A stretch of DNA of 55,350 bases from Chiloscyllium plagiosum. Lineage: Eukaryota. The stretch is taken from NCBI RefSeq assembly GCF_004010195.1, contig NC_057757.1:4037498-4092847 (forward strand), written 5' to 3'. Each line of letters starts with the position of its first letter. Within the stretch, counting starts at the first letter, position 1. A program made the position numbers and the translations under genes. The notes beneath the pieces are model-generated. The model was not told where the DNA came from and did no database searches. It saw only the letters and a list, made by a program, of their open reading frames with translations. Below are positions 17,305 through 53,513 of this stretch, one piece after another.

Positions 17305-17475
17305 CTAGGAGTGCTCTGAAGTTCTGCCAAGGATTCGCGAGTAGATCTCCCCGTCCTCCGATGGGTAAGGGAGTTGAAACGATGTCGATGCTGCCACTGG
17401 GACTGTGATCACACTGTACAAAACCGTGTCAGCCTCTCCCGCCTCTTCAGCTCGGACCCGAGACACCTCGGAGGG
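17305..17475 (-). CDS. Gene A exon 5: terminal coding exon with ITIM and ITSM-like motifs
   Basis: Acceptor catgacctttccag|CCC, phase 0. Encodes PSEVSRVRAEEAGEADTVLYSVITVPVAASTSFQLPYPSEDGEIYSRILGRTSEHS*, ending at TAG (17307-17305). VLYSVI is at 17424-17407 and EIYSRI at 17349-17332. Unique sequence between repeats. Confidence 0.85.
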   Translation of the reverse strand, partial: PSEVSRVRAEEAGEADTVLYSVITVPVAASTSFQLPYPSEDGEIYSRILGRTSEHS

Positions 17476-19451
17476 CTGGAAAGGTCATGCAGATATGAAA
17501 CAGTCAGTCAATCACTCGGTTGCATGGGTTCACTTTAACTCAGAGGCCAGTCAGCCCATCTATCCTGCCCCGCCATACTACATGATGATTCCTCGATGGC
17601 CCACCATCCACAAGGCACAAGTCTAGGAGTGTGAGGGGATATTCCCCACTTGCCCTGGGTGGGGAAGCTCCAACAACACTCGAAGAAGCTCAACACTATC
17701 CAGGGACAAAGCAGCCCTTGCTTGACTGGAACCACAGCCACAAGCATCCCCTCCCTCCCCCATTGACCCTCAGTAGCAGCAGTGTGTACCATCTACAAGG
17801 TGCACTGCAGTAGATCACCAAAGATCCTTAGACAGCACCTTCCAAACCCACGGCCACCTCTATCTAGGAGAACATGGGGAAGCAGATACATGGGAACACT
17901 ATCACGTTCAAGTTCTCCTCTGAACCACTCACCATCCCGACTTGGAAATATGTTGGCTGTTCCTTTGGTGTTGCTGGGTCAGAATCCTGGAACTCCCTCC
18001 TTAATGGTGCTGTGTGGGTGTCCCTACAGCACACAGACTGCAGTGGTTCATCAAACAGAGATAGCTGTGGGGGGGTGGGGGTGGGGGGGTTCAAGTACAT
18101 AGTTCTTTGAAAGTTGTGTTACATGTAGACAGGGTGGTTAAGGAGGCATTTATTATGCTTGTCTTCATTGCTCAGACCAATGAATATAGGAGTTGGGAAG
18201 TCATGTTGTGTTGTGCTCTATGGCACATTATCACCTCAATAAAACTGGCAAAATGTAGATGTCTTAAATATTGTGATGTCCAAACTTTTACAGTCATAGA
18301 ATTGTACAGCATGAAAATAGACCCTTCAGTCCAATTCATCCATGCTGACCATGTGTCCTAAATTAACTTTGTCCCATTTGCCAGTATTTGGCCCTATTTT
18401 CATATACCCATCCAGATGCCTTTTAAATGCTGTAATTGTATCAGCCTCTATCAGTTCCTCTGGCAGCTCATTCCATTCACGCACCACCCTCTGCGTGAAA
18501 AGGTTGCTCCTTAGGTCCCTTTTAAATCTTTCCTCTCTCAACTTAAACCTATGCCCTCTAGTTCTGGAATCCCCCACCTCAGAGAAAAGACTTTGTCCAT
18601 TTATCCTATCCATGCCGCTCATGAATTTATAAACCTCTTTTAAGGTCACCCCTCAGCCTTCGACGCTCCAGGAAAAACAGCTCCAGCCTATTCAACCTCT
18701 CCCTGTAGCTCAAATCCTCCAACCCTGGTAACATCCTTGTAAACCGTTTCTGAACCCTTTCAAGTTTCACAACATCTTTACCGTAGCAGGGTGACCAGCA
18801 TCGCATGCAGTATTCCAAACGTGGTCTAACCAATGTCCTGTATGGTCACAACACGGCCTCCCAACTGCTCGACTCACTGCACTGGCCAATGAAGGCAAGC
18901 ATACCAAACACCTTCATCACTGTCCAGTCTACCTGTGACTCCACTGTCGAGGTACTGTAAACCTGCACTCCAAGGTCACTTTGCTCGGCAACACTCTCAG
19001 GACCTTACCATTAGGTGTATAAGTGCTGCCCTGTGTATTTCTGTTTCTGTCAGTCTATTTTCAATCTTCAATTAAGCGTTGGCATATTGCTATCAATGAC
19101 ATGTTTGATGAGGTTCAGTGTGTGTTCCTCTTCGGCCATTGACTCAGAGAACCTCAGACCAAACCTTGCAGAAACAGAGCAGGTCTGGCAACATCGGTGG
19201 AAAGAAAAATAGAGATCACGTTTCATCTCGATCCAACATCATAATCTTAGACTGTGACGCCTCGCACCCCGCTCCGCCATGCCAGGTTTTGAACTCTATC
19301 GTCCATTGGCAACGTCCTTCCTGCTTTATGTTTCCTCATGTGTCCTCTTTTGAGAACCTCCGCCTGGACAGCAATTTTGGAAAGAGGAACATGGCTAACA
19401 GTTTGAGGTCGGTATGACTTAACTAATCACAAGTATTCTGGCCCTGAATGC

Positions 19452-22399: not shown

Positions 22400-22444
<45 letters not shown>

Positions 22445-23656: not shown

Positions 23657-24873
23657 TAAATCTTTCTTCATCAACTGGAAAATATGCCCTCTTATCTTGA
23701 AATCCTGCACCCTAGGGGAAAGATACCTGCTATTTATCTTATCCACACGCTTCATTACTTTACAAAGCTCTTTAAGGTCACCTCTCAACTTCCTGCACTC
23801 CAGTGAAAGAAGTCCCAGCCTATTCAGCCTATATTGATAATTCAGAACTCCTGTTCCCAGCAATGTCCTGGTAAATCTTTTCTCAACACTGTCGAGCTTA
23901 ATAACATTTCTCCTACAACAGGGTGACCAGAACCACACACAGTACTCCAGAAAAGGCCTCACCAATGTCCTGTAACAGCGTCACTGTGACGGCCCAATTC
24001 CTATACTCAAAGGGCTGGATAATGAAGGCAACATCCAGCGTGTGATGCTGGAAAAGCACAGCAGGTCAGGCAGCATCTGAGTAGCAAAAGAATCGACATT
24101 CCGGGCAAAAGCCCTCCGTCAGGAATGCCTGCTGTGCTTTTCCAGCACCACACTCTCCACTTGGATCTCCGACATCTGCAGTCCTCACTTTCTCCCAATG
24201 AAGGCAAGCGCCTTTTCAACCACCAATATGTGATTGTTTTAGAGATTCATCTGAACCCAGCTGACTATATCTTATATAAGATTCACTTTATTCTTAACTT
24301 GCACCTGGGTGGCATGGTGGCTCAGTGGTTAGCACTGCTGTGTCACAGTACCAGGGACCCCGGTTTGATTCCGGCCTCAGATGACTGTCTGTATGGCATT
24401 TGTATGTTCTCCCCATGTCTGGGGACTAATGCACCTAACCTCCACAGCCCTGAACTCTATGGGCAATTTAGCATGGATAATTCACCTAATGTGCACGTCT
24501 TTGGACTGGTTTCCTCCCACAGTCCAAAGGTGTGCACGTTAGGTCAATTGGCCATGCTAAATTGCCCATAGTGTTCAGGGATGTTTAGGTTAGGTGCATA
24601 AGTCAGGGGCAAATGTGGAGTAATAGAGTAGGGGAATGGGTCTGGGTGGGTTCTTCTTCAGAGGGTCGGTTTGGGCTGAAGGGCCTGTTTCCACACTGTA
24701 GGGATTCTATGATTCTCAATATCTTTATTCACCCATTGCTTCTTAATCTTACCTGCCTCACTCTAACAGGAACAGAACTACTCTCAACTCTCATCATCAC
24801 AATCTTGACAACCTCTCTCCCCAGACCTTGCTGAGTTTCCCCAGCAACTTTCCATCTTTGGCTTTCGGCATAC

Positions 24874-24956
24874 TTGCCTCATGCTCCAACGGTAGATCAC
24901 CGGTCTCGTCTCTTCCTCTGGCTTCCTGTGATTCCGATTCCAATCCTGCAAGAGAC
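24874..24956 (-). CDS. Gene A exon 4: short cytoplasmic exon, two possible boundary pairs
   Basis: Model A: 24945-24878, 68 nt, tcttgcag| ... GAG|gcaagt (GC donor), encodes (G)LESESQEARGRDETGDLPLEHE. Model B: 24956-24874, 83 nt, ttgacag| ... CAA|gtatgc, encodes (G)LLQDWNRNHRKPEEETRPVIYRWSMRQ. Both convert phase 1 to phase 0, which is what joining exon 3 to exon 5 requires. Confidence 0.68.
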
Positions 24957-27282
24957 CTGTCAACATTAGGAGAGGAGACCAGGCCAACAGGAGGAGGTGT
25001 GACAGCTGACTGGAGTTGGCCTAACTGCCTGCCTCTTAATAATACAGGAGTCCTTTGATCAGATCCCGAACCAGAGCCCGAGGGTTGAAGGAGCTGGGAA
25101 AGCAGAACACCGTGGCTCAGTGGTTAGCATTGCTGCCTCATAACACCAGGGACACGGGTTCAATTCCACCCTTGGGTGACTCCACTCTGTGGAGTTTGCA
25201 CGTTCCCCCTGTATGTGCATGAGTTCCCTCCAGGTTCTCTGGTTTTCTCCCACGGTCCAAAGAAAAGATTTGCAAGGATATTGCCAGGGTTGGAGGACTT
25301 GAGCTACAGGGAGAGGTTGAATAGGCTAGGGCTGTTTTCCCTGGATCGTCAGAAGCTGAGGGGTGACTTTATAGAGGTTTTATAAAATCACGAGGGGCAT
25401 GAGTAGGATAAATAGACAAAGCCTTTTCCCTGGGGTGTGGAGTCCAGAACTAGAGGGCATAGGTTTAGGATGAGAGGGTAAAGATATAAAAGAGACCCAA
25501 GGGACAACATTTTCAAGCAGAGGGTGGTACGTGTATGGAATGAGCTGCCAGAGAAAGTGGTGGAGGCTGGTACAATTACAACATTTAAAAGGCATCTGGA
25601 TGGGTATATGAAGAGGAAGGATGTGGAGGGATATGGGCCAGGTGCTGGCAGGTGGGACTAGATTCGGTTGGGATATTTGGTCAGCATGGACGAGTTGGGC
25701 TGAAGGGTCTGTTTCCATGCTTAACATCTCTATGACTCTATGTGCAGGTTAGGGTGGATTGGCCATGCTAAATTGTCCAAGTCAGGTGGGTCAACTATGG
25801 TAAATGTAGGGCGGGTGGGATGCTCTTCAGAGAGTCAGTACACACTCAAGAGACCCAATGGCCTCTCTCTGCATGGATTCTATGAAGGTTTGGCTGGAGG
25901 AATAAAGGCTTCAACTATTTTCTCAATAGCAAGGGTTTGGAAAGCTGAAACACAAAGGGACATGGGAGTCCTAGTTCAGGATTCTCTTAAGATTGACATG
26001 TAGGTTCAGGTGGCAGTTATAAAGGCAAATGCAATATAGGCGTTCATTTCAAAAGGGCTAGAATACAAGTGCAGAGATGTTCTGAGGCTGTATAAGGCTC
26101 TGGTCAGATCACATTTGGAATACCGTGAGCAGTTTCGGGCCCCGTATCTAAGGAAGGCTGTGCGGGCCTTGGAAGGGAGGGTCCAGACGAGGTTTACAAG
26201 CAAGATCCCAGGGATGAAGGGCTTGTCATTTGGGAGCGGTTGAGGACTCTGGGTCTGTACTCGATGGGGTTTGGAAGGATGGGGGTGGGTGGAATCTGAT
26301 TGAGAAGGGGTTTCCACCGGTTGGAGAGACTAGGACCAGAGGGCACAGCCTCAGGAGTGAAGGGATGGACTGAGATGAGGAGGAATTTCTTCAACCAGAG
26401 GGTGGCGACTCTGTGGAACTCATTGTCACAGAGAGCTGTGGAGGGCAAGTCATTAAGGCAGAGGTAAATAGATTCTGAGGAGGGTCACTACACCAGAAAC
26501 TTTAACTGTTTCTCTCTCTATAGCCCCTGTTAGACCCTGCTGTGCTTATCCAGCAATTTCTGGTTTTTGTTTCTGATTTCCAGCATCCAGAGTTTTTTGA
26601 CATTTCAGATACGTTCTCGATTGGTAAGGGGGATCAAGGATTACAGGGAGAGGGCGGGATAATGGGGTTGGAAAACATATCAGCCATGATCGAATGGTGG
26701 AGTTGATTTGGTGGACCAAGTGGGGCCAATTCTGCTCCTATATCTTGTGGTCAGAAGGTAGCAATGACTCCAGGGATTAGTGGAGACCATTCAGTCCCTA
26801 AGATCCATTCTATCATTGAGGTAGATTTCTGCTAGTGATGCCCAGAGTGAGGAAGAGGACACGGATTGGCATGTCGAAAGTCCTGCTCAGTTGAGATTTC
26901 TTTCAACACCCTGAGGTTTTCAAGGAGAATGGAAAGGCTGGTTGATAGAATTTTCCAAGGAGTGGGAATCCCTTGCTGAGAGATTCCCTGAGCAACCATC
27001 TACCTAACAGCAGTGGGACTGTTCGAACTCCCCGATTTTAAAGGATCCTCTCGGAGGGTGAGAGACAGACGGGGTGTTGGATGCATTGTCTGGAGGAATG
27101 CTCAATTCTCAGGGAATTGTCTTGGAGTTCACAACATCAGGTGAAATGGCAACCAGAAATCCCAGTCTAATGTTCCAGACCAGGATTTGACATGGAGATG
27201 TTCAGAAACCCCTCCTACCACCACTCCAATGCCCGCAAAATACATGAATTGGCTGCAATGATTGATTCATGAACACACACAC

Positions 27283-27411
27283 CAGTCAGTCTCCTGCCTC
27301 TGACCAAGAGGAGTGAAGTAACCAGTGTGCACAGGAAGATCCCAGAGAGCAGCCAAGCTGCCATCGACGCCAGCCATTTCCCATTGCTGTAAAATTCAGG
27401 AGGTCCTTCAC
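27283..27411 (-). CDS. Gene A exon 3: stalk, transmembrane helix and basic stop-transfer sequence
   Basis: Acceptor cttcctcctttccag|GT, donor CTG|gtgtgt, 129 nt, phase 1-1. Encodes (G)EGPPEFYSNGK-WLASMAAWLLSGIFLCTLVTSLLLV-RGRRLT. No charged residue in the helix. Confidence 0.88.
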
Positions 27412-29504
27412 CTGGAAAGGAGGAAGAGCCATCAGATTAGACACAAACCGGCTCCGGGAAAAGGCTTTCTCCCAGCCTCTCTTTGCACATTGATGCCCTG
27501 AACTGGATTCAAATCCTGCTCGAGGTTTTGTTCCAGCGAGTGCGCTGAGGGAGGATTTGGAGGAGCAGAGAGACGTTGAAAGAAAGACAGTTATGTTTCC
27601 TACCTGTGAACCCCCATCTCTCTGTTCCCTTCCCCTCCAACCCTGACTTCAACCATCATCCTCTCTGTTTCTCTCTGTCTGTCTCTCTGTCTCCCTGTCT
27701 CTCACTCTCTCTCTGTTGCTCTCTTTCTCTCTATCTCCCTGCCTCACTGTCTCTNNNNNNNNNNNNNNNNNNNNNNNNNNNNNNNNNNNNNNNNNNNNNN
27801 NNNNNNNNNNNNNNNNNNNNNNNNNNNNNNNNNNNNNNNNNNNNNNNNNNNNNNNNNNNNNNNNNNNNNNNNNNNNNNNNNNNGTCATACAGTACGGAAA
27901 TAGACCCTTCGGTCCAACCAGACCATGCAGACCAGATATCCCAAACTAAACCAGTCCCACCTGCCTGCTACTGGCCCATATCTCTCTAAACCTTTCCTAT
28001 TCAGGTACTTATCCAAATGTCTTTAAAATGTTGTAAATGTACCCACTTCCACCATTTCCTCAGGAGGTTTGTTCCACACATGAACACCCCGTGTAAAAAA
28101 GTTACCCCTCGTGTCTTTTTAAAATCTATCTCCGCTCTCCTTAAACATATGCCCCTTCGTCTTGAAATCCCTTACCCTAGCAAAAAGACACACACTCTCT
28201 CTCTATCTTACTCTTGTCTCTCTCTTTCTTTCTGCATCTCTGTTTTTCTTTCTTCCTGTCTCGTTCTCTGTCTGTCTCTCTATCTCTGTCTTTCTCTGTC
28301 ATAGAGTCATACAACACGGAAACAGACCCTTCGGTCCAACCAGTCCGTGCTGAACATAATCCCAAACCAAACTAGTCCCACCTACCTGCTCCTGGCCCAT
28401 AAACCTCTAAACCTTTCCCAATCATGTACTTATCTAAATGGCTTTTAAGTGCTGTAACTGTACCCGCATCCACCACTTCCTCTGGACGTTCATTCCACAT
28501 CCGAACCACTCTCGGTCTAAAAAAGTTACCGTTTACGTCTTTTTAAAATCTTTCTCCTATCACCTTAAAAATATGATAGGATTAGGATATTGGGCTGAAT
28601 GGGCCTTTTCCCATGCTGTAGACCCTCACAGATGGGCTGAAGGGTCTCTTCCTCTGCTGCTGACCTGCACAGATGGGCCAAAAAGCCTCTCCTTATGTTG
28701 CAGATCTCCACAGTTGGGCCAAAAGGCACCTTCCTATGTTGTAGACCTCCATAGATGGGCCGAAGGGCCCCTTCCTTTGCTGTAGACCACCACAGATGGG
28801 CCTCTCCCTATACTGTACACCACAGATGGGCCAAAGGGCCCCTTCCTTTGCTGTAGACCACCACAGATGGGCCTCTCCCCATGCTGTAGACCACCACAGA
28901 TGGACCGAAGGGCCTCTTCCTGTGCTGTCATCCTCCACAGATAGCCCCTAGTCTTGAAATACCTCACGTTAGGGAAAAGGCACACACTCTCTCTCTCTCT
29001 CTCTCTCTCTCTNNNNNNNNNNNNNNNNNNNNNNNNNNNNNNNNNNNNNNNNNNNNNNNNNNNNNNNNNNNNNNNNNNNNNNNNNNNNNNNNNNNNNNNN
29101 NNNNNNNNNNNNNNNNNNNNNNNNCTCTCTCCCTCTCTCTCCCTCTCTCTCTCTCTCTCTCTCAAGACTGGCACTCAGTGCATTCCTAAGGGAATCCTAC
29201 TCTATTAGACCCGTCTTTCAGTCTGTAACAATCTCCATTCACGACCTGCCTGCTGTCCTTACCTGGTCTGGTCTACACATGACTCTAGACTTCACAGCCA
29301 ATGTGGTTGACTTTTAAGTGTCCCTCTGAAAGATTTTCCATTCGGGGCAAACAGGAATGGCCAATAAATGCTGGCCCAGCCAGTGACACCCCCACCCTAT
29401 GAATAAATTAAAACAGAATCTAATTCACTCCTGAGTAATTGCTTGTAGAAGTTTCTCCACCACTGAATTTAAACTGATTGGGTTTGAGGGAATTGACTAG
29501 AGTT

Positions 29505-30121
29505 GTGGAGGTCAGCAGCACAGAAAGAGACCCTTCGGCCCATCTGAGGAGGGCTACAGCACAGAAAGAGACCCTTTGGCCTATCTGTGGAAGGCTACCG
29601 TATAGGGAAAGGCCCTTCAGTCCATCTGTGGAGGGCTACAGCACAGCAAGAGACCCTTCAGCTCATCTGTGGAGGGCTACAGTATAGGAAGAGGCCCTTC
29701 GGCACATCTGTGAAAGGCTACCATATAGGGAGAGGCCCTTTGGCCCATCTGTGGAGGGTTACAGCACAGCAAGAGACCCTTTGGCTATCTGTGGTGATCT
29801 AGAGAACAGGAAGACACCCTTCGGCCCATCTGTGTAGTCTACACAAAACTAGACTTGCCGGCCATCTGTGGAGGACAACAGCACAGGAAGAGGGCCTTCA
29901 GCCCGTCTGTGGTGGTCTACAGCATTGGGAGAGACCCATCAGCCCATCTGCAGAGGGCTATAGCATAGGAAGAGACCTTTTGGCCAATCTGAGGAGGTCT
30001 ACAAAATAAGGAGAGGCCTTTCAGCCCATCTGTGCAGGTTGACAGCAGAGAAAGAGACCCTTCGGTCCATCTGTGCAGCTATACAGCATAGGAAAAGGCC
30101 TCAGCTCAATATCCTAATCCC
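29505..30121 (+). repeat. About 40-bp diverged tandem array; inverted partial copy at 28577-28942
   Basis: Unit approximately ACAGCATAGGAAGAGGCCCTTCGGCCCATCTGTGGAGGGCT. The reverse complement starting at 30121 (GGATTAGGATATTG...) matches 28579 onward unit by unit. Confidence 0.85.
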
Positions 30122-30368
30122 ATTTTGCAGCACACTTGGCCCACAGCCTTGGCCTCACAAGTGCACATCTCAACACTTCCTCAAGGCCTCTCCCACCCTC
30201 ACAGGCAGCGAGTTCCAGACTCCCCCCTGTCCTCCCAACACCCTCTGGGCGAATCCCACCACCTTTTCTTCGGCGTTCGGGGATAACTGAAACATCATCA
30301 AATCCACCCTCACTTCCTTCAAAACCCTCGGACGCGTCCCAACGGGTCCCGGACTCCAAAAGGTGTAC

Positions 30369-30731
30369 CTGACGCCTCAACGATCAAAACAGTTCCGTTC
30401 CCCCGTCCTGTCTTAATCGGGACCGGTCGCTCAATCTGAAGGTGACAGTAATATGTCCCGTTGTCCTTCAGCTGGGCGCTGTTGATGTGCAACATGAAGA
30501 GTCCCGAGTTCCATTTGATGGAGGCGCTGATCCTGTGGTGCCTACAGTTTTCAGTATGACTGTAGTTTTGCATCTTACAGGAGAGGATGGTGTCGTCCTC
30601 ATTTGCCCATTCAAAGAACGCTTCAGAGATCTGCTGTGGGGTGTCAAGGCTGCAGTTTACATGGGCATCAGCTCCTTCTTTCACAGTGAGAATTGAGGGA
30701 GTTTGGGAAATCAAGATGTCAGTATAGGCAC
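30369..30731 (-). CDS. Gene A exon 2: VJ-type IgV domain resembling the CD28/CTLA-4 family
   Basis: Acceptor ttttcag|GT, donor TCAG|gtacac, 363 nt, phase 1-1, open frame. Has B-strand Cys (HVNC), C-strand Trp (FFEW), DNGTYYC and a J-like GRGNGTVLIV. Extra Cys pair SCKMQNYSHTENC. F-G loop CHLQIERPVPIKTGRGNGT has the same length and P-x-P/G positions as CTLA-4 CKVELMYPPPYYLGIGNGT. Confidence 0.93.
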
Positions 30732-30959
30732 CTGAAAACATAAGAACATTAGAATGTAAGAACTAGGAGCAGGAGTAGGCTGTCTGGCCAATCGATGCTG
30801 CTCGGACATTCAGTAAGGTCAGGGCTGATCTTTTTTGTGGACCCAGCTCCACTTACCCATCCACTCACCCTAACACACCAGACACATGCACAGACCAGCT
30901 ATTCAACAACAATCATCCTAACACCCACAAACGGAGCTGCATCAGGACATTATTTAAAC

Positions 30960-36893: not shown

Positions 36894-36960
36894 CTTGAAG
36901 ATCCAAGGCCAGAAAGATGAGCAGGGCGGTGAAAGTATTTAAGACGGCTTCAAATCCCAT
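36894..36960 (-). CDS. Gene A exon 1: signal peptide of a CD28/PD-1-family-like inhibitory receptor
   Basis: ATG in good context (gccgaaATGG). Encodes MGFEAVLNTFTALLIFLALDLQ with a hydrophobic core. Ends at a strong phase-1 donor CAAG|gtaaga; 67 nt. Joins in frame to the 30731 acceptor, giving ...LQGAYT/DILISQTP, a typical V-domain N-terminus. Confidence 0.85.
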
Positions 36961-37004
36961 TTCGGCTGAGTTGGAGGGTTATCTGCCTCTGTTATTGCCA
37001 TTCT

Positions 37005-37120
37005 GCAGCTTTTTAAATGCTGCGCTGCATCCTCCCAGCGACTGAGTTTGGACAGGATGTGGGTAGGTACCCTCAACTGAGTGTTGCCTAGACATTAAAC
37101 GTGAGATTTCACAATAACTG
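37005..37120 (-). promoter_or_regulatory. Putative proximal promoter of gene A
   Basis: Unique sequence upstream of the ATG. TATA-like TTTAAAAA (37017-37010), ETS:RUNX composite-like ACAGGATGTGGG (37052-37063) and C/EBP-like ATTGTGAAAT (37115-37106). Motif matches only. Confidence 0.45.
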
Positions 37121-37751
37121 CGCTTATGTTATTGTGTTCAGTAAGGTTGGGACATTGCATCTCATGAACTTTACATCTGACAGCACACACAGTGTGAGTT
37201 GGCAGTCACACAGCTTGCTTGCAAAACTGTGAGAATGCATTCCCAAAACAGCCCGTCCAGCTCAAACTTTCCTTGGTCTTATACCTCATCCCCAATTGCA
37301 CACACCTTCCCCCCACACCCTCAAGTAGGTGGGGGTGAGCTGGTACACTCTGTACAATGTAGGGGACACTTCCACGGTGTTGTTAGTGAGAGAGATCCCA
37401 GACTTGAATGACAGTACATTGCTCTGGGGGGGGAACTGTGAAGGAGGATGCAGAGGGCGCTCAGCGCGATTCGGACAAATTGAGTGAGCCGGCAAAAGCA
37501 CAGCAGACGCCATGCAATGTGAATCACCCGTGAGGCTATCCACTTTGGTGGCAAAACAGGAGAAGGCAGATTATTACCTGAATGGGGATAGATCAGGAAG
37601 GGGAGACGGGTGACGAGACCTGGGTATCTCTGAAAGTGAACATTACAAATACAGCAGGCGGTGAAGGAGGTAAATGGGATGTTGGCCTTCGTAGGTACGA
37701 ATACAGAAGCAGATATGTCTTGCTGCAATTGTACAGGGTCTTGACTATTGT

Positions 37752-39122
37752 CCAGTGTGTACAGTCCGGTCTCTATATCACACTGGGAGCACTGTGTCCA
37801 ATCTGGTCTCTATATCACACTGGGAGCACTGTGTACAGTCTGGTCTCTATATCACACTGGGAGCACTGTGTCCAGTCCGGTCTCTATATTGCACTGTGTA
37901 CAGTCCGGTCTCTATACCACACTGGGAGCACTATGTACAGTCCGGTCTCTATATCATACTGGGAGCACTGTGTACAGTCCGGTCTCTATATCAAACTGGG
38001 AACACTGTATACAGTCCGGTCTCTATATCACACTGGGAGCACTGTGTACAGTCCGGTCTCTATATCAGACTGGGAGCACTGTGTACAGTCCGGTCTCTAT
38101 ACCACACTGGGAGCACTGTATACAGTCCGGTCTCTATATCACACTGGGAGCACTGTGTACAGTCCGGTCTCTATATCACACTGGGAACACTGTATACAGT
38201 CCGGTCTCTATACCACACTGGGAGCACTATGTACAGTCCGGTCTCTATATCACACTGGGAACACTGTATACAGTTCCGGTCTCTATATCACACTGGGAGC
38301 ACTGTGTACAGTCCGGTCTCTATACCACACTGGGAACACTGTATACAGTCCGGTCTCTATATCACACTGGGAGCACTGTGTACAGTCCGGTCTCTATACC
38401 ACACTGGGAGCACTGTGTCCAGTCTGGTCTCTATATCACACTGTGTACAGTCTGGTCTCTATACCACACTGGGAGCACTGTGTCCAGTCTGGTCTCTATA
38501 TCACACTGTGTTCAGTCTGGTCTCTATATCACACTGGGAGCACTGTGTACAGTCCGGTCTCTACATTACACTGTGTACAGTCCGGTCTCTATACCACACT
38601 GGGAGCACTGTGTCCAGTCCGGTCTGTATATTGCACTGTGTACAGTCCGGTCTCTATACCACACTGGGAGCACTGTGTCCAGTCTGGTTTCTATATCACA
38701 CTGTGTACAGTCCGGTCTCTACATTACACTGTGTACAGTCCGGTCTCTATACCACACTGGGAGCATTGGGCACAGGCCAGTCTCTATACTACACTGGGAG
38801 CACAATGTCCAGTCTGGTCTCTATATCACACTGAGAGCACTGTGTACAGTCCAGTGTCTATATTACACTGAAGGCACTGTGTACAGTCCGGTCTCTATAT
38901 TACACTGAGAGCACTGTGTACAGTCCAGTGTCTATATTATACTGTGTACAGTCTGATCTGTATACTAAACTGTGTACAGTCCGATCTCAATACCACACTG
39001 GGAACACTGTATACAGTCTGGTCTCTATATCACACTGGGAGCACAGTGTACAGTCCGGTCTCGATACCACACTGGGAACACTGTGTGCAGTCAGGTCTCT
39101 ATACCACACTGGGAACACTGCA
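37752..39122 (+). repeat. Minisatellite, 37-bp unit with a 28-bp variant
   Basis: Unit CACTGGGAGCACTGTGTACAGTCCGGTCTCTATATCA repeated over about 1.37 kb, directly following CR1 ORF2 sequence. Confidence 0.95.
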
Positions 39123-42100
39123 TATATTCGACATTATAGAGGTGGTGGACCTGAGGATTGTGACACACTTGCATGAACTGAGTTGTTAAGCTGATTAAAA
39201 AATGATTGACTAGACTGGCGCTCTGTCCTCTTGTTACCGGGATTGCTGGGGGGCTCCCGATGGATTTTAAACTGGTTCAATCAAGAATCAGGGCCAGACT
39301 ATTCAGGTGAGACGTTAGGCAGTACGTCTACACACAGAGGGTGGGAGAGGTTTGGGACTCTCTTCCACAAACACCAATGGATGCTGAGTCAGTTGTTCAT
39401 TCAATGATCGCATTCGTTGGGGAGGTATCAGTCTTGTCTTATTATCGTTGGATTGTTAATCCAAAAACCCAGGGAATGTTCTGGTTCAACTGCACCACAA
39501 AGAGTGGAGTTTGAATTCAGTAACTAAAAAAGATCTGGAATTAATAGGTCAATGATGATCATGTGTTGATTATCAGGGTAAAACCCCTTCACTAATATCC
39601 TTTAGGAAAGGAAACAGACATCCTTACCTGGTCTGGCCTACACGTGACTCCAGACCCACAGCAATACAGTTGACTCTTAACTGCCCTTTGGGCAATTAGG
39701 GATGGGCAATAAATTCTGGGCGTAGCCAGTGATGCCCTGTGAATGAATAAAAAATATTAAATCAGAGATTGATAATTTTGTGTTAAACTAAGGGGATATG
39801 GACCAAAAAGTGGAGTTAGGCCAGGGATCAGCTGGTGAATGTTGGAACAGGCTTAAGGGGCTAAATGCTCCCTCCTTCAAATCATGCCAGACCTGCTGAG
39901 TTTCTCCAGCAGCTCTCCATTTATGTTCCCGATCCCCCGCAGTGTTTTGCTTCTGGGAGAAGGGGTGAGATGAAGAGGAGGTGAGGAGAGACTGGACCAG
40001 GGGTGGGCACAGTGGCTCAGCGGTTAACACCCCTGCCTCACAGTGCCAGGGACTCAGGTTCAGTCGACTGTTGGTGTGGAGTTTGCACGTTCTCCCCGTG
40101 TCTGCATGAGTAACCTCCGGGTACTCCGGTTTCCTCCCACACTCCAAAGATATGCAGGTTAGGGCGGATTGACCATGGGAAATTGCCCATATGTCCAGGG
40201 ATATATTGGTGTATTAGTTAGGGTAGGGGAATGGATCTGGCTGGGTTACTGTTCAGAAGGTTGGTGTGGACTTGTTGGGCCGAATGGCCTGTTCCCATAC
40301 TGGAGGGATTCAGATGGTGGAATGGCCTCTTTCTTGAGCTGCACAGTCCTTGCGGAGGGAGATCATGCAGATTCTATCAGCAGTGGACTGCTTTTACACC
40401 CACAACCAAAGGTACTGTCACCAAAGGTCTGGTCAGATGCAACTTTCAGTAAACCTTACAACAGGGTTTTAACACATGCAAGGTGTGAGTTCTGATTAAT
40501 ACCGACTAGAGAGTGGGAAGCAGTCTCATGTAGAATTGTTCCATTCGCAAACTGTAAACTTCTCAACCACTGTTGAAGTGTGAGTGCTGGTTGCAAAGAA
40601 AAATAACTGGTAAATGAAAAAGCCACAGATTAGGCAAAACGACTTGAACATGATACTGTTCACAGGGTCGGTGTGGACTAGATAGTCCAAAAATGGCTTG
40701 CTCTCACATTGCTGGCTCTATCCAGCAAGACTGGGAGGACTAGCCATTAACAGTTCACACATTGGAGGCAACTCAGAGCAGATTCACCAGATTGATTCCA
40801 GAGACAAAGAATGTCTTATGAACAGAGATGGAGTGCTGTATACTGCCTGGTGTTTAGAAGGAGAGAAGATATAACTGAGGTCTATAAGATGCGAAAGGGG
40901 ATTGACAAAATTGATGTAGAGAGGGTGATTCCCTGTGTAGGGCGATCTGGAACGAGAGGTCACAGTTTTGGGACAAGGGATGGCAGATTTAAAACAGAGA
41001 TGGGGAAGAATTACTTCTCTCAAAGGGTGAGGAATCTGTGCAATTCACTCGTCCAGAGTGCTATGGAAGCTGGGTAAACGTAAGGAGGAGACAGATTTTT
41101 AATTAGTAACAGGTTAAAGGGGCTGTGGAGAGCAGGCAGCAGAGTGGAATTGAGGCCAAGATAAGATCAGTACTGATGGTGTTCGAGGCAGAGCAGATTC
41201 GAGGGGGTGAATGGCCTCCCCCTGTTCTTACTTCTTAATGTTCCTCCTGAAAGCTTAACCCTTGAACCCTCTGATTATCATCAGTTCCTAGTGTAGCTGA
41301 GAATTAAAACTCAGTGGACACAATCCAGAGACTTCCTGAGGGGAAGAGAAAGGAAATAGAGAGGAGAAAAGACTTTGAATTGGTATAGCGCCCTTCCGGA
41401 ACTTTGTTTTGTCAACCATTCCATGCGATTGCTGTCAAGACCCCTATCCCTAACTGCAGCCCCTTGGAACCGAGTGGACCATCTTAGAGGGCAGTTACGT
41501 GTTAACGCCTTCAGGTCTGGAGTCACGTGTAGGCCCTGAGCAGGTGAGGGAGAGTGGATTTGCCTCCTGAATGGGAGGGCCTGAAGGTGGGGGGGGCGAC
41601 TTTTACGAACATCGACAGTGCAGTCGCTGTCAGGTTGGGTTTTAATTCCGGGTCCTACGCTCCAGAAAGAGTCAGGAACCAGATCCGAAGTCTTGGCGCT
41701 GCCGCGGCACTGGGAACCGTCGTCATCTGCACAGCAAGATCCCACAGAGGAGTAATGTGACAATGGCCAGATCGTTAACTCTTGCGTTCTCCCTCCTTCT
41801 GGAGAGAGGTAGCTATTGGCGGGGGGGGGGGGAGGGCGTTAATTCCCTTGTCCATCCTTGACATTTTCCCATGCTCCTCTGAGCCAAGTTGATCTTGCCC
41901 AGGGAATGCCCTGTGTGCCTCTGTCTGAGTGTATTTCATCTGTGCATCCTTTGCTCACTGTGGTCTGCTCATAAACAATTCTTGTCACTGTACTTTGGTA
42001 TGCGTGACAATCAATCAATCAAGTTTACCTTCTTGCACCCCCATCCCCCCACCCCCAAGCTCTGCCACAGAGAGGGATTCGAACCTGCGACTCTGAAGCA

Positions 42101-43075
42101 GGAGTAGCTGAAATGGCAGAAAATGTCACGAGGGGCAAGGAGACCCTGGGGGCAAGGACAATCTTCCCAGCGCGGGATGGCATGGTGGCTCTGTGGTTAG
42201 CACTGTTGTCTCACAGTGTCAGGGACCTGGGTTCGATTCCAACCTTGGGGTATCTGTCTGTGGAGTTTCACATTCTCCCCGTGTCTGCGTGGGTTTCCTC
42301 TGGGTGCTCTGGTTTCCTCCCACAATTCAAAGATGTGCAGGTTAGGGTGGATTGGCGGTGCTAGAGTGTGCAGGTTAGGGTGAATTGACCGTGCTATAGT
42401 GTGCAGGTTATGGTGGATTGGCCATGCATTAGTGTCCATGAATGTGCAGGTTATAGTCACAGAGATGTACAACGCAGAAACAGACTCTTCAGTCCAACTT
42501 GTCCATGCTGACCAGATACCCCAACCCAATCTGGTCCCACCTGCCACCACCCAGCCCATATCCCTCCAAACCCTTCCTATTCATATACGCACAGGTTAGG
42601 GTGGATTGGCCATGCTAAATTGCCCATAGTGTCCAGGAATGTGTGAGTTAGGTGCATTAGTCAGGGGTAAATGTAGAGTAACAGGGCAACGGGTCTGGAT
42701 GGGATTCTCTTCAGAGAGTCAGTATGGACTTGTTGGGCTGAAGGGCCTGTTTCTACACTATAGGGACTCTATGAAACTTCCAAGATCTGCGGTATAGCTG
42801 CAGTGGGGTCCGTCGCTGTTCCTTCTCTCGGTGTTGCTCCCAGACTTCAGCTGGAGTTCCTCCAGCCAACCTTCTGCTTTCCCCGAGACAGAAAAAAAAA
42901 CTGCAGATGCTGGGATCCAAGGTAGACAGGCAGGAGGCTGGAAGAACACAGCAAGCCAGGCAGCATCAGGAGGTGCAGAAGTCAACGTTTCTGGTATTGA
43001 CCCGTCTTCGGGACTCCCGAGATGCAGTGCGTGTGTGGCACGGAGCCGTGTCAGAATCAGTTAAAACCTGAAACC

Positions 43076-43081
43076 TTTATT
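43076..43081 (-). terminator. Candidate polyadenylation signal of gene B
   Basis: AATAAA on the minus strand about 205 nt downstream of the TGA, in non-repetitive sequence. Confidence 0.45.
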
Positions 43082-43287
43082 TCGACAACATGGTGATGAT
43101 CAACCTCCTCCGAACGGGCTCAGAACTGGAAACTGCGGAAGGATTGACTGACCTCTTCCTGTGCTGTAAACATCTGACTTATAAGAGAAGGCAGAGGCTG
43201 CTTCCTCTCTCTGACATTTGGGGAAGCAGATTTGCATCCTCATCTGTGCTCAGCTATCACCAGTTCTGCTGAAAAAGTCCCTTATTT

Positions 43288-43376
43288 TCACAAAGTAACC
43301 ATGACGAAGGTCAGCAGCAACAAGGTTAAGAGTTGATGGCGTCCCCGGTGTGTTGAGCCAGTGCTGTTTGTGGACC
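43288..43376 (-). CDS. Gene B terminal coding exon: probable GPI-anchor signal (or tail-less membrane anchor)
   Basis: Acceptor tcttgcgttcttataccgacag|GG, phase 1. Encodes (G)STNSTGSTHRGRHQLLTLLLLTFVMVTL*: small residues, a polar spacer, then 14 hydrophobic residues ending at the stop codon. Confidence 0.75.
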
Positions 43377-50266: not shown

Positions 50267-50608
50267 CCATGATGTTGACCCTGGCGCGGGCACACACCTC
50301 CTTCCTGCCGTTGTCCAGGCAACACTCGATGGCACCCCCTGGCCGCCCGAAGGAGAAGCCCGGCACGCGGAAGCTGGCCAATCCGCCGGCCTCTTCCAGG
50401 ATCAGGACGGGGAGCTCGGAGCGGGCTCCTCCGGCTGCCCCCACTCTCCGCAGCTCGAAGCGGCGCTGCTCGGTAGAGTTGTGGATCCCGCAGTTCACTC
50501 CCAGGTCGTCAGTGGTGATACAGTGCAGGTTCAAGCCCCAGTGAAAACTCAGCTCTTCCCCATGTTTCGCTCTGACCTCGGAGTGCACTGCCCAGAAAAC
50601 ATCGGCGT
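50267..50608 (-). CDS. Gene B second extracellular exon: atypical Ig-like domain
   Basis: Acceptor ctgtctttgcag|AC, donor ATGG|gtacgt, 342 nt, phase 1-1, open, GC/CpG-rich unique sequence. Encodes (D)ADVFWAVHSEVRAKHGEELSFHWGLNLHCITTDDLGVNCGIHNST...LASFRVPGFS...AIECCLDNGRKEVCARARVNIM. Beta-strand pattern and a G-strand-like end; no canonical B-strand Cys. Confidence 0.78.
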
Positions 50609-53174
50609 CTGCAAAGACAGGAAAACAACAGCGTCACAGCAGGAGGGACTCAATACATCCTCATGTCGGAAGCAGAAGAGAATAGATGGGAGGACCATTC
50701 ATCTCCCTCCGCCATTTTTAATCCTGACATGATCGATCCTGGGCTCCCACATCCCCCCATTCATTCAGATCAATCTGCCAATGGAGCCTCTGGGAGGGAG
50801 AATCCCAAAGAAATTTCCTCCCATTGTGTTCCTTACCTCCTGTCAAAGAATCATACATAAATTCATAAGATAAAGGAATGGAATTAGGCCATTCGGCCCA
50901 TCAAGTCTGCTCAGCCATTCCATCATGGCTGATTCACTCCTCACCCCCATTTTCCTACCTTCTCCCCCTATCTCTTCGACACATTACCAATTAAAAATCT
51001 GTCAAATTCCTCCTTAAATTTACTCGTTGTCCCAGCATCCACTGCACTTTGGGGTAGCGAATTTCACGGATTCACAATCCTTTGGGAGAACTCGCTTCTC
51101 CCCAACTCTGTTTTAAATTTGCTTCCCCTTTATCCTAAGACTGTGACCTCTCGACCCAGAATGTCCCGCAAGAGGAAGCATTCACTCCACGTCTACTTTA
51201 TCCACACCTTTCATCATCTTGAATACCTCCATTTGATATCCCCATATTCATCTAAATCACAGAGAGTATAGGCCTAGTCTGTTCAATCTCTCTCCATACG
51301 ACAAACCCTTCATCTCTGGGATCGATCTAGTGAACCTCCTCCGAAATGCCTCCAATGCCACTGCATCTTTCCTCAAACAAAGAGACCGAAACTGTGCACA
51401 ATACTCCAGGTGTGGTCTCACCAGTTGCTTGTACAGTTGCAACAATGCTTCCTTACCTTTATATTCTATTCCTTTAGCTATAAAAGCAATTCATTTTCTT
51501 TATTATCTGTTTAGCTGCATGCTAGTTTTATGGGACTCATGAATAAAGACAGTCAGAAACCTCTGCACCTGACCACCTTTAAGTCTCTCCCCATTTAGAT
51601 AATAGGTCATCTTCCCATTTAACCAACCGAAATGCACAACCTCACGCTTATCCACATTACACTCCATCTGCCACATTTCCGCCCACTCTCCTAACCAATC
51701 TATATGCATTTGTAAGATTCTTATTTCATCATTGCAATATATTGTCCTGCCTATTTTAGTGTTGTCTGCAAATTTGGCTGTACAGCCTTCTATCCTTGTA
51801 TCCACGTCGGTAACATGGATTGTAAATAGCTGGGGAATCCAAGGACCGAACCCTTTGGCACAGAAACAGACCCTTCAGCCCAACTTGTCCATGCTGACCT
51901 GGTTTACCAAACTAAACTAGTCCCATTTGCCTGTGTTTGGCCTACGTCCCGCTAAAAGCTTTCCTATTCATGTATCCATTCAAATGCCTTTTAAATATTG
52001 CAATTGTACCAGACTCCAGCAGTTCCTCTGGCAGCTCATTCCATGCACACACCACCCACTATAAATTTAGATAAATTTGTCTAAACAATTTATCATTGTT
52101 TCGATAAATGGCAAACGACAGTGGACCCAGAACTGATTCTTGTGACACACTGCTGGTCACAGGCCTCCAGTCTGAAAAACAAGCCTCCTGTCTCCTACCA
52201 TCAAGCCAAGTCAGTATCGAATTGGCTGGCCCTCCCCGGATCCCTGTGACTGATCCTTGCTAACAAGTCTACAATGCGGTATCTTTCTAACGCCCATTTC
52301 CGCCACTCTGCCTTCACCAATTTGCTCACTTCTTCAAAAAAACTCAAATCAAGTTGCTTCCCACGCACAAAGCCATGCTGACCATCCCTAATTAGTCCTT
52401 GCCTTTCCAAATGTCGATTCTGTCCCTCACAGAGCCCTCCAACAAATTACCCACCACTGATGAACCTCCAAAGAATAAGCCACCCAGACTTATTCCCCTA
52501 TTAATCTACATTTACCCCTGATTAATACATATAACCTGCACACATTGGGCAATTTAGCATGGCCAATCCACCCTACACTGCACATGACAGGAGGAAACCA
52601 GAGCACCCAGAGGAAACCCACGCAGATACCAAGGGAACGTGTAAGCTCCACATAGACAGTCACCCGAGGCTGGAATCAAACTGGGGTCCCTGGCACTGTG
52701 AGTCAGCAGGGCTAAGCACTGAGCCACAGTGCCACTCGCAGTAGGGCGAGAGTAGGGAGGTGGCTTGGTGGCTCAGTGATTAGCACTGCTGCCTCACAGC
52801 ATTAGCTTCCCAAGTTCGATTCCAGCCTTGGGTGACTATCTGTGTGGAGTTTGCACATTCTCCCCGTGTCTGCGTGGGTTTCCTCTGGGTGCTCCAGTTT
52901 CCTCCCACAGTCCAAAGATGTGCAGGTCAGGTGAATTGGTCATGCTAAATTGCCCGTAGTGCTAGGTGCATTAGTCAGAGGGAAATGGGTCTGGGTGGGT
53001 TACTCTTTGGAGGGTTGGTGTGGACTGGTTGGGCCGAAGGGCCTGTTTCCACACCGGATGCAATTGAGCTCAACATTCAGCCAAGATCCTATTGAATGGT
53101 GGAGCAAGCTCGAGGGGCCAAATGGCATCCACCTATTCCTATTTCTACGTTTCTATTCTACAAAGGCTGCTTAC

Positions 53175-53513
53175 CTTGACTGACGCCCAGCGAAACCATG
53201 GAGCAAAGTTCACTCTTCTGCTGGGGGTTCGGGCGGATGAAACAAAGGTAGGTGCCACTGTCGTTCAGCTTGGCATTCTGGAGGGTCAGGTTATGGTTGG
53301 GATGCAGCATGGTCCTGTTCTTGTACCAGGCACTTTGGCGATTGCCCATGGAGTCTTCTGGCTGCCCATGCACCACCAAGTCACCGCCAGTCGATTGTTT
53401 CTGCCAGATGATGCTAGTGGGCTCCGCCACACCAGTAGCTTGGCACGGCAGGACGACTGAGTTCCCACATGTAACCGATACGTTGGAGACTACATTCCTG
53501 CACAGTGCCTGTC
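53175..53513 (-). CDS. Gene B IgV exon: B7-family (CD80/CD86/ICOSL/CD276-like) V domain
   Basis: Acceptor ctttgtcccatag|GA, donor CAAG|gtaagc, 339 nt, phase 1-1. Encodes (G)QALCRNVVSNVSVTCGNSVVLPCQATGVAEPTSIIWQKQSTGGDLVVHGQPEDSMGNRQSAWYKNRTMLHPNHNLTLQNAKLNDSGTYLCFIRPNPQQKSELCSMVSLGVSQ. LPC, WQK, LVVH, YKNRT and DSGTYLC are B7-type V-domain motifs. Confidence 0.9.

What the first reader, a model, noticed from the sequence alone, without database searches (positions are those of the whole stretch)
17305..53513. Candidate linked immune-checkpoint pair: B7-like ligand gene directly upstream of a CD28/PD-1-like inhibitory receptor gene
Seen: two IgSF genes on the same strand, with only about 6.3 kb between the gene B stop (43288) and the gene A ATG (36960). 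Gene B has a B7-type IgV; gene A has a CD28/CTLA-4-type IgV and two inhibitory tyrosine motifs. Known: B7-family proteins are the ligands of CD28-family receptors, and in humans the cognate pairs CD80/86-CD28/CTLA4, PD-L1-PD-1 and HHLA2-TMIGD2 are on different chromosomes. Inference: this may be a co-inherited ligand-receptor module in cartilaginous fish, either lineage-specific or an ancestral arrangement. Adjacency alone does not show binding.
Basis: partly seen in the sequence, partly recalled or inferred. Interest (0 to 1): 0.92.

Follow-up and report, generated by a model that had tools for sequence, protein, structure and literature searches.

The report
Shark inhibitory receptor beside B7-like gene
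Two real immune-type genes sit head-to-tail in this shark DNA, an expressed inhibitory-looking receptor and a B7/butyrophilin-like surface protein, but nothing yet shows that they bind each other.

Summary
The anatomy is real. On the minus strand lie gene B (three exons in the window: V domain, second V-like domain, GPI-type tail; its signal exon is outside the window) and, 6.3 kb downstream, gene A (5 exons, 265 codons: signal, VJ-type IgV, TM, two tail exons). Spliced RNA contigs from two species join gene A's IgV exon directly to its TM exon across both assembly gaps, so the gaps are intronic. Gene B matches a conserved ~280-aa shark and ray family that RefSeq leaves uncharacterised. Both of its domains resemble B7/butyrophilin V domains, and there is no C1 domain, so it is B7-like but not a canonical B7. 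Gene A's FG loop and G strand resemble CTLA-4 and the published CD28H-like motif, but the whole domain scores best against TCR/Ig V and NKp30. The tail has one canonical ITIM and one non-canonical YxxI. The junction to the ITIM exon is inferred, not seen. First-stage notes list similar "linked modules" on other pieces of this genome (unchecked). Verdict: two genuine neighbouring genes, with the receptor-ligand link still speculative.

The parts
36894..36960 (-). Gene A exon 1, coding part: ATG at 36960, signal peptide MGFEAVLNTFTALLIFLALDLQ, donor G|GTAAGA, phase 1
   Evidence: Sequence. The same signal-to-IgV junction stands in the C. punctatum protein P0001. The X5 contig has 131 nt beyond the IgV exon.
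30369..30731 (-). Gene A exon 2: germline-joined VJ-type IgV domain (363 nt) with YYCHLQIERPVPIKTGRGNGTVLIV and an extra Cys pair
   Evidence: Pfam V-set 4.2e-10. RNA contigs cover 30367-30733. 93% identical to P0001.
27755..27883 (.). Assembly gap 1, inside intron 2 of gene A
   Evidence: The spliced contigs jump from 30367 to 27409. CT-rich flank.
29013..29124 (.). Assembly gap 2, inside intron 2 of gene A
   Evidence: The spliced contigs jump from 30367 to 27409. (CT)n on both flanks.
27283..27411 (-). Gene A exon 3: short stalk plus transmembrane segment (WLASMAAWLLSGIFLCTLVTSLLLV, then RGRR). No stalk Cys and no charged TM residue.
   Evidence: Joined directly to the IgV exon in X5 record 29 and X3 record 23. 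51-56% identical to whale shark P0156.
24878..24945 (-). Gene A exon 4: 68-nt cytoplasmic exon (LESESQEARGRDETGDLPLEHE), GC donor GAG|GCAAGT, ends in phase 0
   Evidence: Sequence. Depth in bin 24850-25048 is present only in the two runs that hold the spliced contig, and it equals about 67 nt of that contig. 73-77% identical to P0156.
17305..17475 (-). Gene A exon 5 (inferred link): tail with ITIM VLYSVI and a second YSRI 25 residues later, stop TAG at 17307-17305
   Evidence: Acceptor TTTCCAG and an open frame in phase 0. The junction with exon 4 was not seen. Of the X5 contig's 324 nt beyond the TM exon, about 257 lie outside the laid stretch.
53175..53513 (-). Gene B V1 exon: B7/butyrophilin-type IgV, phase 1-1
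   Evidence: Pfam V-set 2e-11. 59% identical to zebra shark P0009. The family profile hits CD276, BTN, VTCN1.
50267..50608 (-). Gene B second domain exon: divergent V-type Ig domain (Trp where the B-strand Cys stands in relatives, CC in the F strand), phase 1-1
   Evidence: No Pfam hit on its own. 59% identical to P0009. The profile of 7 family D2 segments hits the IgV of CD276, MOG and BTN1A1/2A1/3A.
43288..43376 (-). Gene B last exon: STNSTGSTHRGRHQLLTLLLLTFVMVTL then stop, a GPI-signal-type hydrophobic C-terminus without a cytoplasmic tail
   Evidence: Sequence. 68% identical to P0009. 5 of 6 relatives likewise end inside the hydrophobic stretch, and P0055 carries 5 more residues.
36961..43287 (.). 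Intergenic 6.3 kb between gene B stop and gene A ATG. It holds a 37-nt tandem array at 37756-39120.

Best explanation
The stretch holds two genuine, unrelated IgSF genes that are neighbours on the minus strand.

Gene A (36960 to 17305, 5 exons, 265 codons) encodes a type I membrane receptor. Its parts are a signal peptide, one germline-joined VJ-type IgV domain, an uncharged transmembrane segment and a cytoplasmic tail. The FG loop and G strand (YYCHLQIERPVPIKTGRGNGT) resemble CTLA-4 and the CD28H-like motif. The tail most likely carries a canonical ITIM (VLYSVI) and a second YxxI 25 residues further on. By analogy with PD-1, BTLA and other ITIM receptors, phosphorylation of these tyrosines would recruit tandem-SH2 phosphatases (SHP-1/2) and damp activation of the cell that carries it. 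This step is inferred.

Gene B (its exons in the window run from 53513 to 43288) encodes a member of a conserved elasmobranch family of about 280 residues. It has two B7/butyrophilin-type V domains in tandem and a GPI-signal-type C-terminus, so it is probably a lipid-anchored surface protein that is a ligand or counter-structure for some receptor.

Shown: the exons, the splice of gene A's IgV exon to its TM exon, expression of gene A, and conservation of both genes in other sharks. Inferred: the exon 4 to exon 5 junction, inhibitory signalling and GPI anchoring. Their adjacency is most simply explained as neighbourhood within an IgSF-rich region. A functional pairing is possible but unsupported.
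For: Gene A. Pfam V-set. Spliced contigs X5 record 29 (0 mismatches) and X3 record 23 (a second species, 15 differences in 367 nt) join IgV to TM. Depth at exon 4 equals about 67 nt of those contigs, and only in those two runs. Homologues: P0001 of C. punctatum (93% over the V domain, same signal-to-V junction), P0156 of whale shark (266 aa, 67% to P0001 by BLASTP, with TM and exon 4 conserved) and P0157 of catshark (43-44% to P0156). The motif YYCHL..ERP.PIK.G.GNGT and the extra Cys pair stand in 4 of 4 family sequences. For the FG/G stretch, 19 of the 22 best PDB entries are CTLA-4. The nearest Atlas clusters are PD-1 at 0.95 and CTLA-4 at 0.94. The Y-Y spacing of 25 equals PD-1's Y223/Y248 (sequence; PMC12151841 passages).

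Gene B. The three exons align in order with six shark and ray proteins, at 59/59/68% identity to P0009. V1 profile: CD276 3.4e-11, BTN2A1 1.9e-9, VTCN1 3.5e-9, PD-L1 4e-7. D2 profile: IgV of CD276, MOG, BTN1A1. No C1-set hit in any of the 5 family proteins or in the window's D2. Atlas: BTN1A1-like 0.94, VTCN1 0.93, Thy-1 0.93.

The two V domains share only a 19/55 local match, so they are not tandem duplicates.
Against: The exon 4 to exon 5 junction of gene A was not observed, because the single read-laying run did not reach 17475. The whale shark RefSeq model P0156 ends in a different, ITIM-less tail that reads on past the exon 4 donor. The second tyrosine motif is not an ITIM or ITSM by consensus. 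As a whole domain, gene A's V scores best against TCR Valpha, Ig VL and NKp30, with no CD28-family chain among the best 60. The CTLA-4 matches to the FG stretch have only marginal E-values, 0.02 to 0.3. I obtained no RNA evidence for gene B in this species, and its first exon is outside the window. I ran no GPI predictor or structure model.
Confidence: 0.7

Rival explanations
1. The two genes are a cognate, co-inherited receptor-ligand pair. Gene B's GPI-anchored V-V protein would bind gene A's IgV in trans (or in cis) and trigger its ITIM, and linkage would keep matching alleles together.
For: A B7/BTN-like V protein lies beside a CD28-like ITIM receptor, 6.3 kb apart on the same strand. CD28-family receptors mainly bind B7-family proteins (PMC11599192 Discussion). 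Linked IgSF or lectin receptor-ligand pairs exist elsewhere (CD2-CD58, 2B4-CD48, NKR-P1-Clr; recalled, not checked here). Both genes evolve fast (57-67% identity within one shark order).
Against: I have no binding, co-expression or conserved-adjacency data. Gene B's family was found in sharks and rays, while gene A's was found only in three sharks, although that search was far less sensitive. IgSF genes cluster for many reasons. First-stage notes list other such 'modules' in this genome, which fits general clustering as well as it fits pairing.
Confidence: 0.12
2. Gene A is the shark CD28HL2 already described by Quiniou et al. 2024, or the CD28HL3 that they could not find in cartilaginous fish. 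On this reading it is a member of the CD28H-like branch and the receptor is not new.
For: CD28HL2 motif: Y-x-C-[polar]-xxx-E-I-P-[P/A/L/V]-[P/F/L]. Gene A has Y-Y-C-H-LQI-E-R-P-V-P, which matches 5 of the 6 specified positions after the Cys. [quoted passage not shown] CD28HL3 has an ITIM/ITSM tail (PMC11599192, sections 16-20 read).
Against: Arg replaces the Ile of E-I-P in all 4 family sequences. The tail has no Y-x-N-x. None of the published synteny markers (slbp, tacc3, tmem129; prkab1b, pla2g1b, tmem233) is in the window or in the scan's notes; only LECT2 is noted 22 kb away (unchecked). The paper's sequences are in supplements that I could not open.
Confidence: 0.35
3. Gene A is not a CD28-family member. 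It would be another non-rearranging VJ-type receptor (NKp30-like or NITR-like) that carries an ITIM, and the CTLA-4-like FG loop would be convergence.
For: As a whole domain, the best PDB matches are Ig kappa, TCR Valpha and NKp30 (6yjp, 7.1e-5), with no CD28-family chain in the best 60. The G strand has a near-complete J motif, G-x-G-T-x-L-x-V.
Against: NKp30 signals through a charged TM residue (recalled) and gene A has none. The FG/G stretch aligns without gaps to CTLA-4. Atlas features point to PD-1 and CTLA-4. Quiniou et al. themselves link the CD28 family to VJ domains.
Confidence: 0.3
4. Gene A's main transcript lacks the ITIM exon. The tail would end soon after exon 4, as in the whale shark model, so the receptor would not be inhibitory.
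For: P0156 ends with an ITIM-less tail that corresponds to read-on sequence after the exon 4 donor. The exon 4 donor is GC, not GT.
Against: Depth in bin 24850-25048 fits 67 nt, not the 96 nt expected for read-on. The X5 contig carries about 257 further nucleotides that lie outside the laid stretch. GAG|GCAAGT is the usual form of a GC donor (recalled). Phase 0 opens the ITIM frame exactly.
Confidence: 0.2

Closest known systems
CD28H (TMIGD2) and the CD28H-like genes CD28HL1-3 (Quiniou et al. 2024, PMC11599192)
   Same: A single IgV, a TM and a tail with tyrosine motifs. The FG-loop motif is YxC-x-xxx-E-x-P-x-P. GxG in the G strand. CD28HL3 carries ITIM/ITSM, and CD28HL2 is reported in sharks only among cartilaginous fish.
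   Different: E-R-P instead of E-I-P. No YxNx. The published synteny markers were not seen. No tree could be built here.
CTLA-4
   Same: The FG hairpin and G strand align without gaps over 30 residues, including GxGNGT. There is an extra Cys pair in the C'-D region (the CTLA-4 side of this is recalled).
   Different: No MYPPPY, no stalk Cys for dimers, no YVKM. The whole-domain similarity is weak.
PD-1 / BTLA
   Same: Five-exon layout (recalled). A monomer-type stalk. Two tail tyrosines 25 residues apart, the first a canonical ITIM.
   Different: The tail does not match the PD-1 consensus (I/V)(D/E)YG(E/V)L(D/E)F and (T/V)EYATIx(F/Y). PD-1's FG loop has no conserved prolines.
NKp30 (NCR3) and other non-rearranging VJ receptors
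   Same: A germline-joined VJ-type V domain. NKp30 is the best non-antigen-receptor PDB match for the whole domain (7.1e-5).
   Different: No charged TM residue. An ITIM tail instead of adaptor coupling.
B7-H4 (VTCN1), B7-H3 (CD276) and butyrophilins
   Same: Gene B's V domains match their IgV domains best. Size of about 280 aa and a hydrophobic C-terminus with no real tail, as reported for B7-H4 (recalled). Atlas lists VTCN1 at 0.93.
   Different: The second domain is V-type, not C1. The GPI-type signal is conserved. There is an N-terminal Cys and a G-strand Cys. The family was found only in sharks and rays.
Linked receptor-ligand gene pairs (CD2-CD58, 2B4-CD48, NKR-P1-Clr)
   Same: Receptor and candidate ligand genes side by side.
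   Different: Those pairs have shown binding, and none is shown here.

Membership tests
CD28 family (as defined in PMC11599192) | Single extracellular IgSF V domain, TM, cytoplasmic tail | tested here: met
   Pfam V-set. The IgV-TM splice is seen in RNA contigs. Exon model of 265 codons.
CD28 family (CD28H-like branch) | Proline motif in the FG (CDR3) loop: YxC-x-xxx-E-I-P(-x-P) | tested here: inconclusive
   Gene A has YYCHLQIERPVP. E, P and PxP are in place, but Arg stands for Ile in 4 of 4 family sequences. The motif is taken from paper sections 15-20.
CD28 family | GxG bulge in the G strand | tested here: met
   GRGNGT, conserved as G-x-G-N-G-T in 4 of 4. It aligns to CTLA-4's GIGNGT.
CD28 family | Conserved synteny block of one of the nine members | not testable with these tools
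Only an unchecked LECT2 note exists, 22 kb away.
CD28 family | Clusters with family members in a V-domain tree | not tested
   No reference CD28-family sequences could be fetched, and the supplements are closed. No CD28-family chain stands in the best 60 PDB hits for the whole domain.
PD-1 | Tail consensus (I/V)(D/E)YG(E/V)L(D/E)F and (T/V)EYATIx(F/Y) | tested here: not met
   Gene A has TVLYSVITV and GEIYSRILG. The consensus is from PMC12151841 passages.
NKp30 | Charged TM residue for adaptor coupling and no ITIM (feature recalled) | tested here: not met
   The TM segment WLASMAAWLLSGIFLCTLVTSLLLV has no charged residue, and an ITIM is present.
ITIM-bearing inhibitory receptors | [quoted passage not shown] | tested here: inconclusive
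   VLYSVI fits. The second motif, EIYSRI, does not. The exon carrying both is joined to the transcript by inference only.
B7 family | Membrane-distal B7-type IgV | tested here: met
   The profile of 9 family proteins hits CD276 (3.4e-11), BTN2A1, BTN3A1, VTCN1, MOG and PD-L1, with JAML and pIgR interleaved.
B7 family | Membrane-proximal C1-type Ig domain (V-C1 ectodomain) | tested here: not met
   No C1-set hit at E<=1 in the 5 family proteins or the window's D2. The D2 profile matches IgV domains of CD276, MOG and BTN.
GPI-anchored proteins | C-terminal hydrophobic signal with no cytoplasmic residues, small residues upstream | tested here: inconclusive
   The pattern is present in the window, and 5 of 6 relatives also end inside the hydrophobic stretch (P0055 carries 5 more residues). 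I ran no predictor and no biochemistry.

The most novel reading that the evidence does not exclude
Gene B's V-V, GPI-anchored B7/butyrophilin-like protein is the physiological ligand of the neighbouring ITIM receptor. On this reading the pair is an ancient cis-linked checkpoint module of elasmobranchs. Gene A would be the CD28H-like inhibitory member (CD28HL3-type) reported as missing from cartilaginous fish, and the pair would give a first ligand assignment for the orphan CD28H-like branch.
Probability: 0.1. Interest if true: 0.8.

Novelty: new variant of a known kind. Interest (0 to 1): 0.5.

Why it matters
The CD28 and B7 families control lymphocyte activation. Quiniou et al. 2024 (PMC11599192) widened the CD28 family to nine members, but ligands for the extra members are unknown and the ITIM-bearing CD28HL3 was not found in cartilaginous fish.

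This locus offers an expressed shark receptor with a CD28H/CTLA-4-like loop and an ITIM. Next to it lies a conserved but uncharacterised V-V, GPI-type B7/butyrophilin-like gene. That gives a concrete, cheap binding hypothesis to test.

If the two do not bind, the locus still adds two annotated members to shark IgSF immune gene catalogues. It also shows that one RefSeq model (whale shark) probably has a wrong 3' end.

Tried and rejected
Rejected or unproductive.

(1) PD-1 orthology: the tail consensus and the proline-free FG loop of PD-1 are not matched.

(2) NKp30 identity: no charged TM residue.

(3) Canonical B7 (V-C1): the second domain is V-type.

(4) Tandem duplication of one gene: the two V domains share only 19/55 locally. 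V1 and D2 of gene B show no pairwise similarity.

(5) A signal exon for gene B inside the window: none among the minus-strand frames of 20 aa or more above 53500.

(6) Extending the CTLA-4 match to the C'-G region: no CTLA-4 in the best 60.

(7) A family profile of gene A against PDB: only TCR and antibody V domains in the best 60.

(8) The first homologue search with the 147-aa exon frame found only P0001, because the length filter (up to 257 aa) excluded 265-266-aa proteins. Repeating it with P0001 and then with a profile found P0156 and P0157.

(9) Literature. The CD28HL names occur in one held paper only. Searches listed no paper on a shark GPI-type B7-like gene or on a linked B7/CD28 pair. 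These are search listings of the held library only, and supplements were closed. Of PMC11599192 I read sections 14, 15, 16-20, 21 and 23 plus found passages. Of PMC12151841 and PMC10751288 I read found passages only. PMC13588502 I saw only as the start of its abstract in a listing.

(10) Conserved adjacency, V-domain trees with reference CD28/B7 sequences, and structure or complex modelling could not be done.

Full report
OBSERVATION. The window is repeat-rich vertebrate DNA. A six-frame regex scan for the Ig F-strand pattern gave four hits, and only two lie in Ig-like frames, at 30465 and 53262, both on the minus strand. Both frames pass Pfam V-set (4.2e-10 with 40.2 bits, and 2e-11 with 44.5 bits, against a cut-off of 26). 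Gene A runs from the ATG at 36960 to the stop ending at 17305. Gene B runs from the V exon starting at 53513 to the stop ending at 43288. The two are 6328 bases apart.

GENE A MODEL AND THE ASSEMBLY GAPS. The exons are 36960..36894 (signal, donor GTAAGA), 30731..30369 (IgV), 27411..27283 (stalk and TM), 24945..24878 (68 nt, donor GCAAGT) and 17475..17305 (tail and stop). Together they make 798 nt, or 265 codons plus stop, with phases 1, 1, 1, 0.

I searched public runs with the IgV exon and laid four runs on 24850-30800. Record 29 of run X5 (950 nt, no mismatches) aligns to 27282-27409 and continues without a break at 30367-30733. Record 23 of run X3 (a different organism label, with 15 differences in 367 nt and 4 in 128 nt) shows the same joint. 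The one or two extra bases at each end are letters shared by intron and next exon, so the joints agree with the GT-AG borders.

This shows three things:
- Gene A is transcribed and spliced.
- The splice is conserved in a second species.
- Both N gaps (27755-27883, 29013-29124) lie in intron 2, with correct order and strand across them and no exon of this transcript inside them.

The gaps border CT-rich simple repeats. I did not fill them or look them up.

Exon 4 is supported indirectly. Bin 24850-25048 has depth only in X5 (4.58) and X3 (4.9), the two runs that hold the spliced contig. In both runs this equals about 67 nt at the contig's depth (13.6 and 14.6). That fits a 68-nt exon with one ambiguous base, and does not fit the 96 nt expected if transcription read on past the GC donor.

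The X5 contig has 324 nt beyond the TM exon, so about 257 nt lie outside the laid stretch. The only call of read laying was used, so the junction to 17475 remains inferred from the acceptor, the phase and the open frame.

GENE A RELATIVES AND FAMILY. The exon frame alone found one protein, C. punctatum chiPu_0019843 (P0001, 159 aa). It has the same signal-to-V junction and then reads into the intron. It is 93% identical over the V domain.

The length filter had hidden longer proteins, so I repeated the search with P0001 and then with a profile. This found whale shark LOC125487770 (P0156, 266 aa, 67% to P0001) and a partial catshark protein (P0157, 43-44% to P0156). P0156 conserves the TM exon (51-56%) and exon 4 (73-77%), but then continues in sequence that corresponds to read-on after the exon 4 donor in another frame, and it has no ITIM. 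All four sequences keep YYCHL..ERP.PIK.G.GNGT and an extra Cys pair between the C' and D regions.

Against solved structures the whole domain scores best with Ig kappa, TCR Valpha and NKp30 (6yjp, 7.1e-5). No CD28-family chain is in the best 60, whether the query is the single sequence, a C'-to-G sub-stretch or the family profile.

The FG loop plus G strand alone gives a different picture. 19 of the 22 best entries are CTLA-4, aligned without gaps over 30 residues, but with marginal E-values of 0.02 to 0.3. The ESM Atlas places P0001 nearest clusters named PD-1 (0.95) and CTLA-4 (0.94, 0.93). This is a lead, not a test.

Quiniou et al. 2024 (PMC11599192; sections 14-16, 21 and 23 read) define nine CD28-family members:
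- The CD28H group has YxC-x-xxx-E-I-P in the FG loop.
- CD28HL2 adds [P/A/L/V]-[P/F/L] to that motif. [quoted passage not shown]
- CD28HL3 has ITIM/ITSM and was not detected in cartilaginous fish.

Gene A's Y-Y-C-H-LQI-E-R-P-V-P fits this pattern except for Arg in place of Ile. Its tail does not match the PD-1 consensus given in PMC12151841 (found passages). Its TM has no charged residue, unlike what I recall for NKp30. I therefore file gene A as a VJ-type ITIM receptor that is probably of the CD28H-like branch, with membership not proven.

TAIL. Exon 5 reads PSEVSRVRAEEAGEADTVLYSVITVPVAASTSFQLPYPSEDGEIYSRILGRTSEHS. VLYSVI fits the ITIM consensus. EIYSRI has Glu at -2, so it is neither an ITIM nor an ITSM. 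The two tyrosines are 25 residues apart, as are Y223 and Y248 of PD-1. Recruitment of SHP phosphatases is inference.

GENE B. A full HMMER search with the V exon found 707 proteins at E<=0.001. The single-domain matches at the top are six proteins of 280-359 aa from zebra shark, horn shark, basking shark, sevengill shark, a stingray and a sawfish. RefSeq names them 'uncharacterized' or 'CXADR homolog'.

The three window exons align in order with these proteins, at 59%, 59% and 68% identity to the zebra shark protein. 5 of the 6 relatives also end inside the hydrophobic stretch, and P0055 carries 5 more residues. That is the pattern of a GPI signal. I ran no predictor. The signal exon is not in the window.

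A profile of nine family proteins hits CD276 (3.4e-11 for the 2-Ig form), JAML, BTN2A1, BTN3A1, VTCN1 (3.5e-9), pIgR, MOG and PD-L1. None of the five family proteins scanned, nor the window's second domain, hits Pfam C1-set at E<=1. In the two ray proteins and one shark protein the second domain hits V-set a second time. A profile of the seven second domains matches the IgV domains of CD276, MOG, BTN1A1, BTN2A1 and BTN3A, apart from a summed titin hit.

Gene B is thus a V-V protein of B7/butyrophilin type. It is not a V-C1 B7. The Atlas lists BTN1A1-like (0.94), VTCN1 (0.93) and Thy-1 (0.93) clusters. More distant sequence relatives carry mixed names such as CXADR homologue, CD276-like and JAM-like.

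THE PAIR. The two V domains share only a 19/55 local match around the E-F strands, so the genes are not recent duplicates. I could gather nothing else that bears on pairing:
- Gene B's family was seen in sharks and rays, and gene A's in three sharks only. The gene A searches were word-limited, so this difference is weak evidence.
- First-stage notes list at least two further 'linked B7-like plus inhibitory receptor' readings on other pieces of this genome, and an NKp30-like gene beside TRIM45. I did not check them. They fit general clustering of IgSF immune genes as well as they fit true pairing.

The held literature that I searched names the CD28HL genes in one paper only. The listings showed no description of this gene B family or of a linked B7/CD28 pair in sharks. 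The supplements of PMC11599192, which hold the shark sequences and synteny maps, were closed. They could show that gene A is already catalogued.

VERDICT. Gene A is an expressed, probably inhibitory, CD28H/CTLA-4-like VJ receptor. Gene B is a conserved but uncharacterised V-V GPI-type B7/butyrophilin-like protein. The receptor-ligand reading remains an untested hypothesis, to which I give about 0.1.

Noticed in passing
window 37756-39120: A tandem array of about 39 copies of a 37-nt unit (79% matches) fills much of the intergenic space just upstream of gene A. It produces long spurious plus-strand ORFs.
   Followed up: partly
window 53794-54393 and 54730-55088: Two further tandem arrays (33-nt unit, about 16 copies; 70-nt unit, about 5 copies) lie just upstream of gene B's V exon, presumably in its first intron.
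   Followed up: no
window 24878 (minus strand): Exon 4 of gene A ends at a GC donor (GAG|GCAAGT). The whale shark RefSeq model P0156 instead continues into sequence matching the window's read-on frame 24732-24878, and it lacks the ITIM exon. That model's 3' end is probably wrong, or it is an alternative isoform.
   Followed up: partly
window 12786-13351 and 13889-14274 (also 13463-13642 and 14386-14565): Identical or near-identical ORF translations recur about 923 bases apart, which indicates a direct duplication of about 1 kb in the region downstream of gene A.
   Followed up: no
window 1503-2384 minus strand: A 294-aa open frame looks like a LINE reverse-transcriptase fragment. SINE-like units (GGTGGCTCAGTGG...) recur through the window, one starting about 120 bases after gene A's stop.
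   Followed up: no
window 10380-10699 and 16219-16478: Two more assembly gaps lie outside the finding, downstream of gene A.
   Followed up: no
gene B family proteins P0009, P0016, P0025, P0055, P0121 and window 53500, 53200: A Cys just before the first V domain (QxxC) and a Cys in its G-strand region (KSExC) are conserved in the shark members and the sawfish. This suggests an extra disulfide that clamps the N-terminus. The stingray protein lacks both.
   Followed up: no
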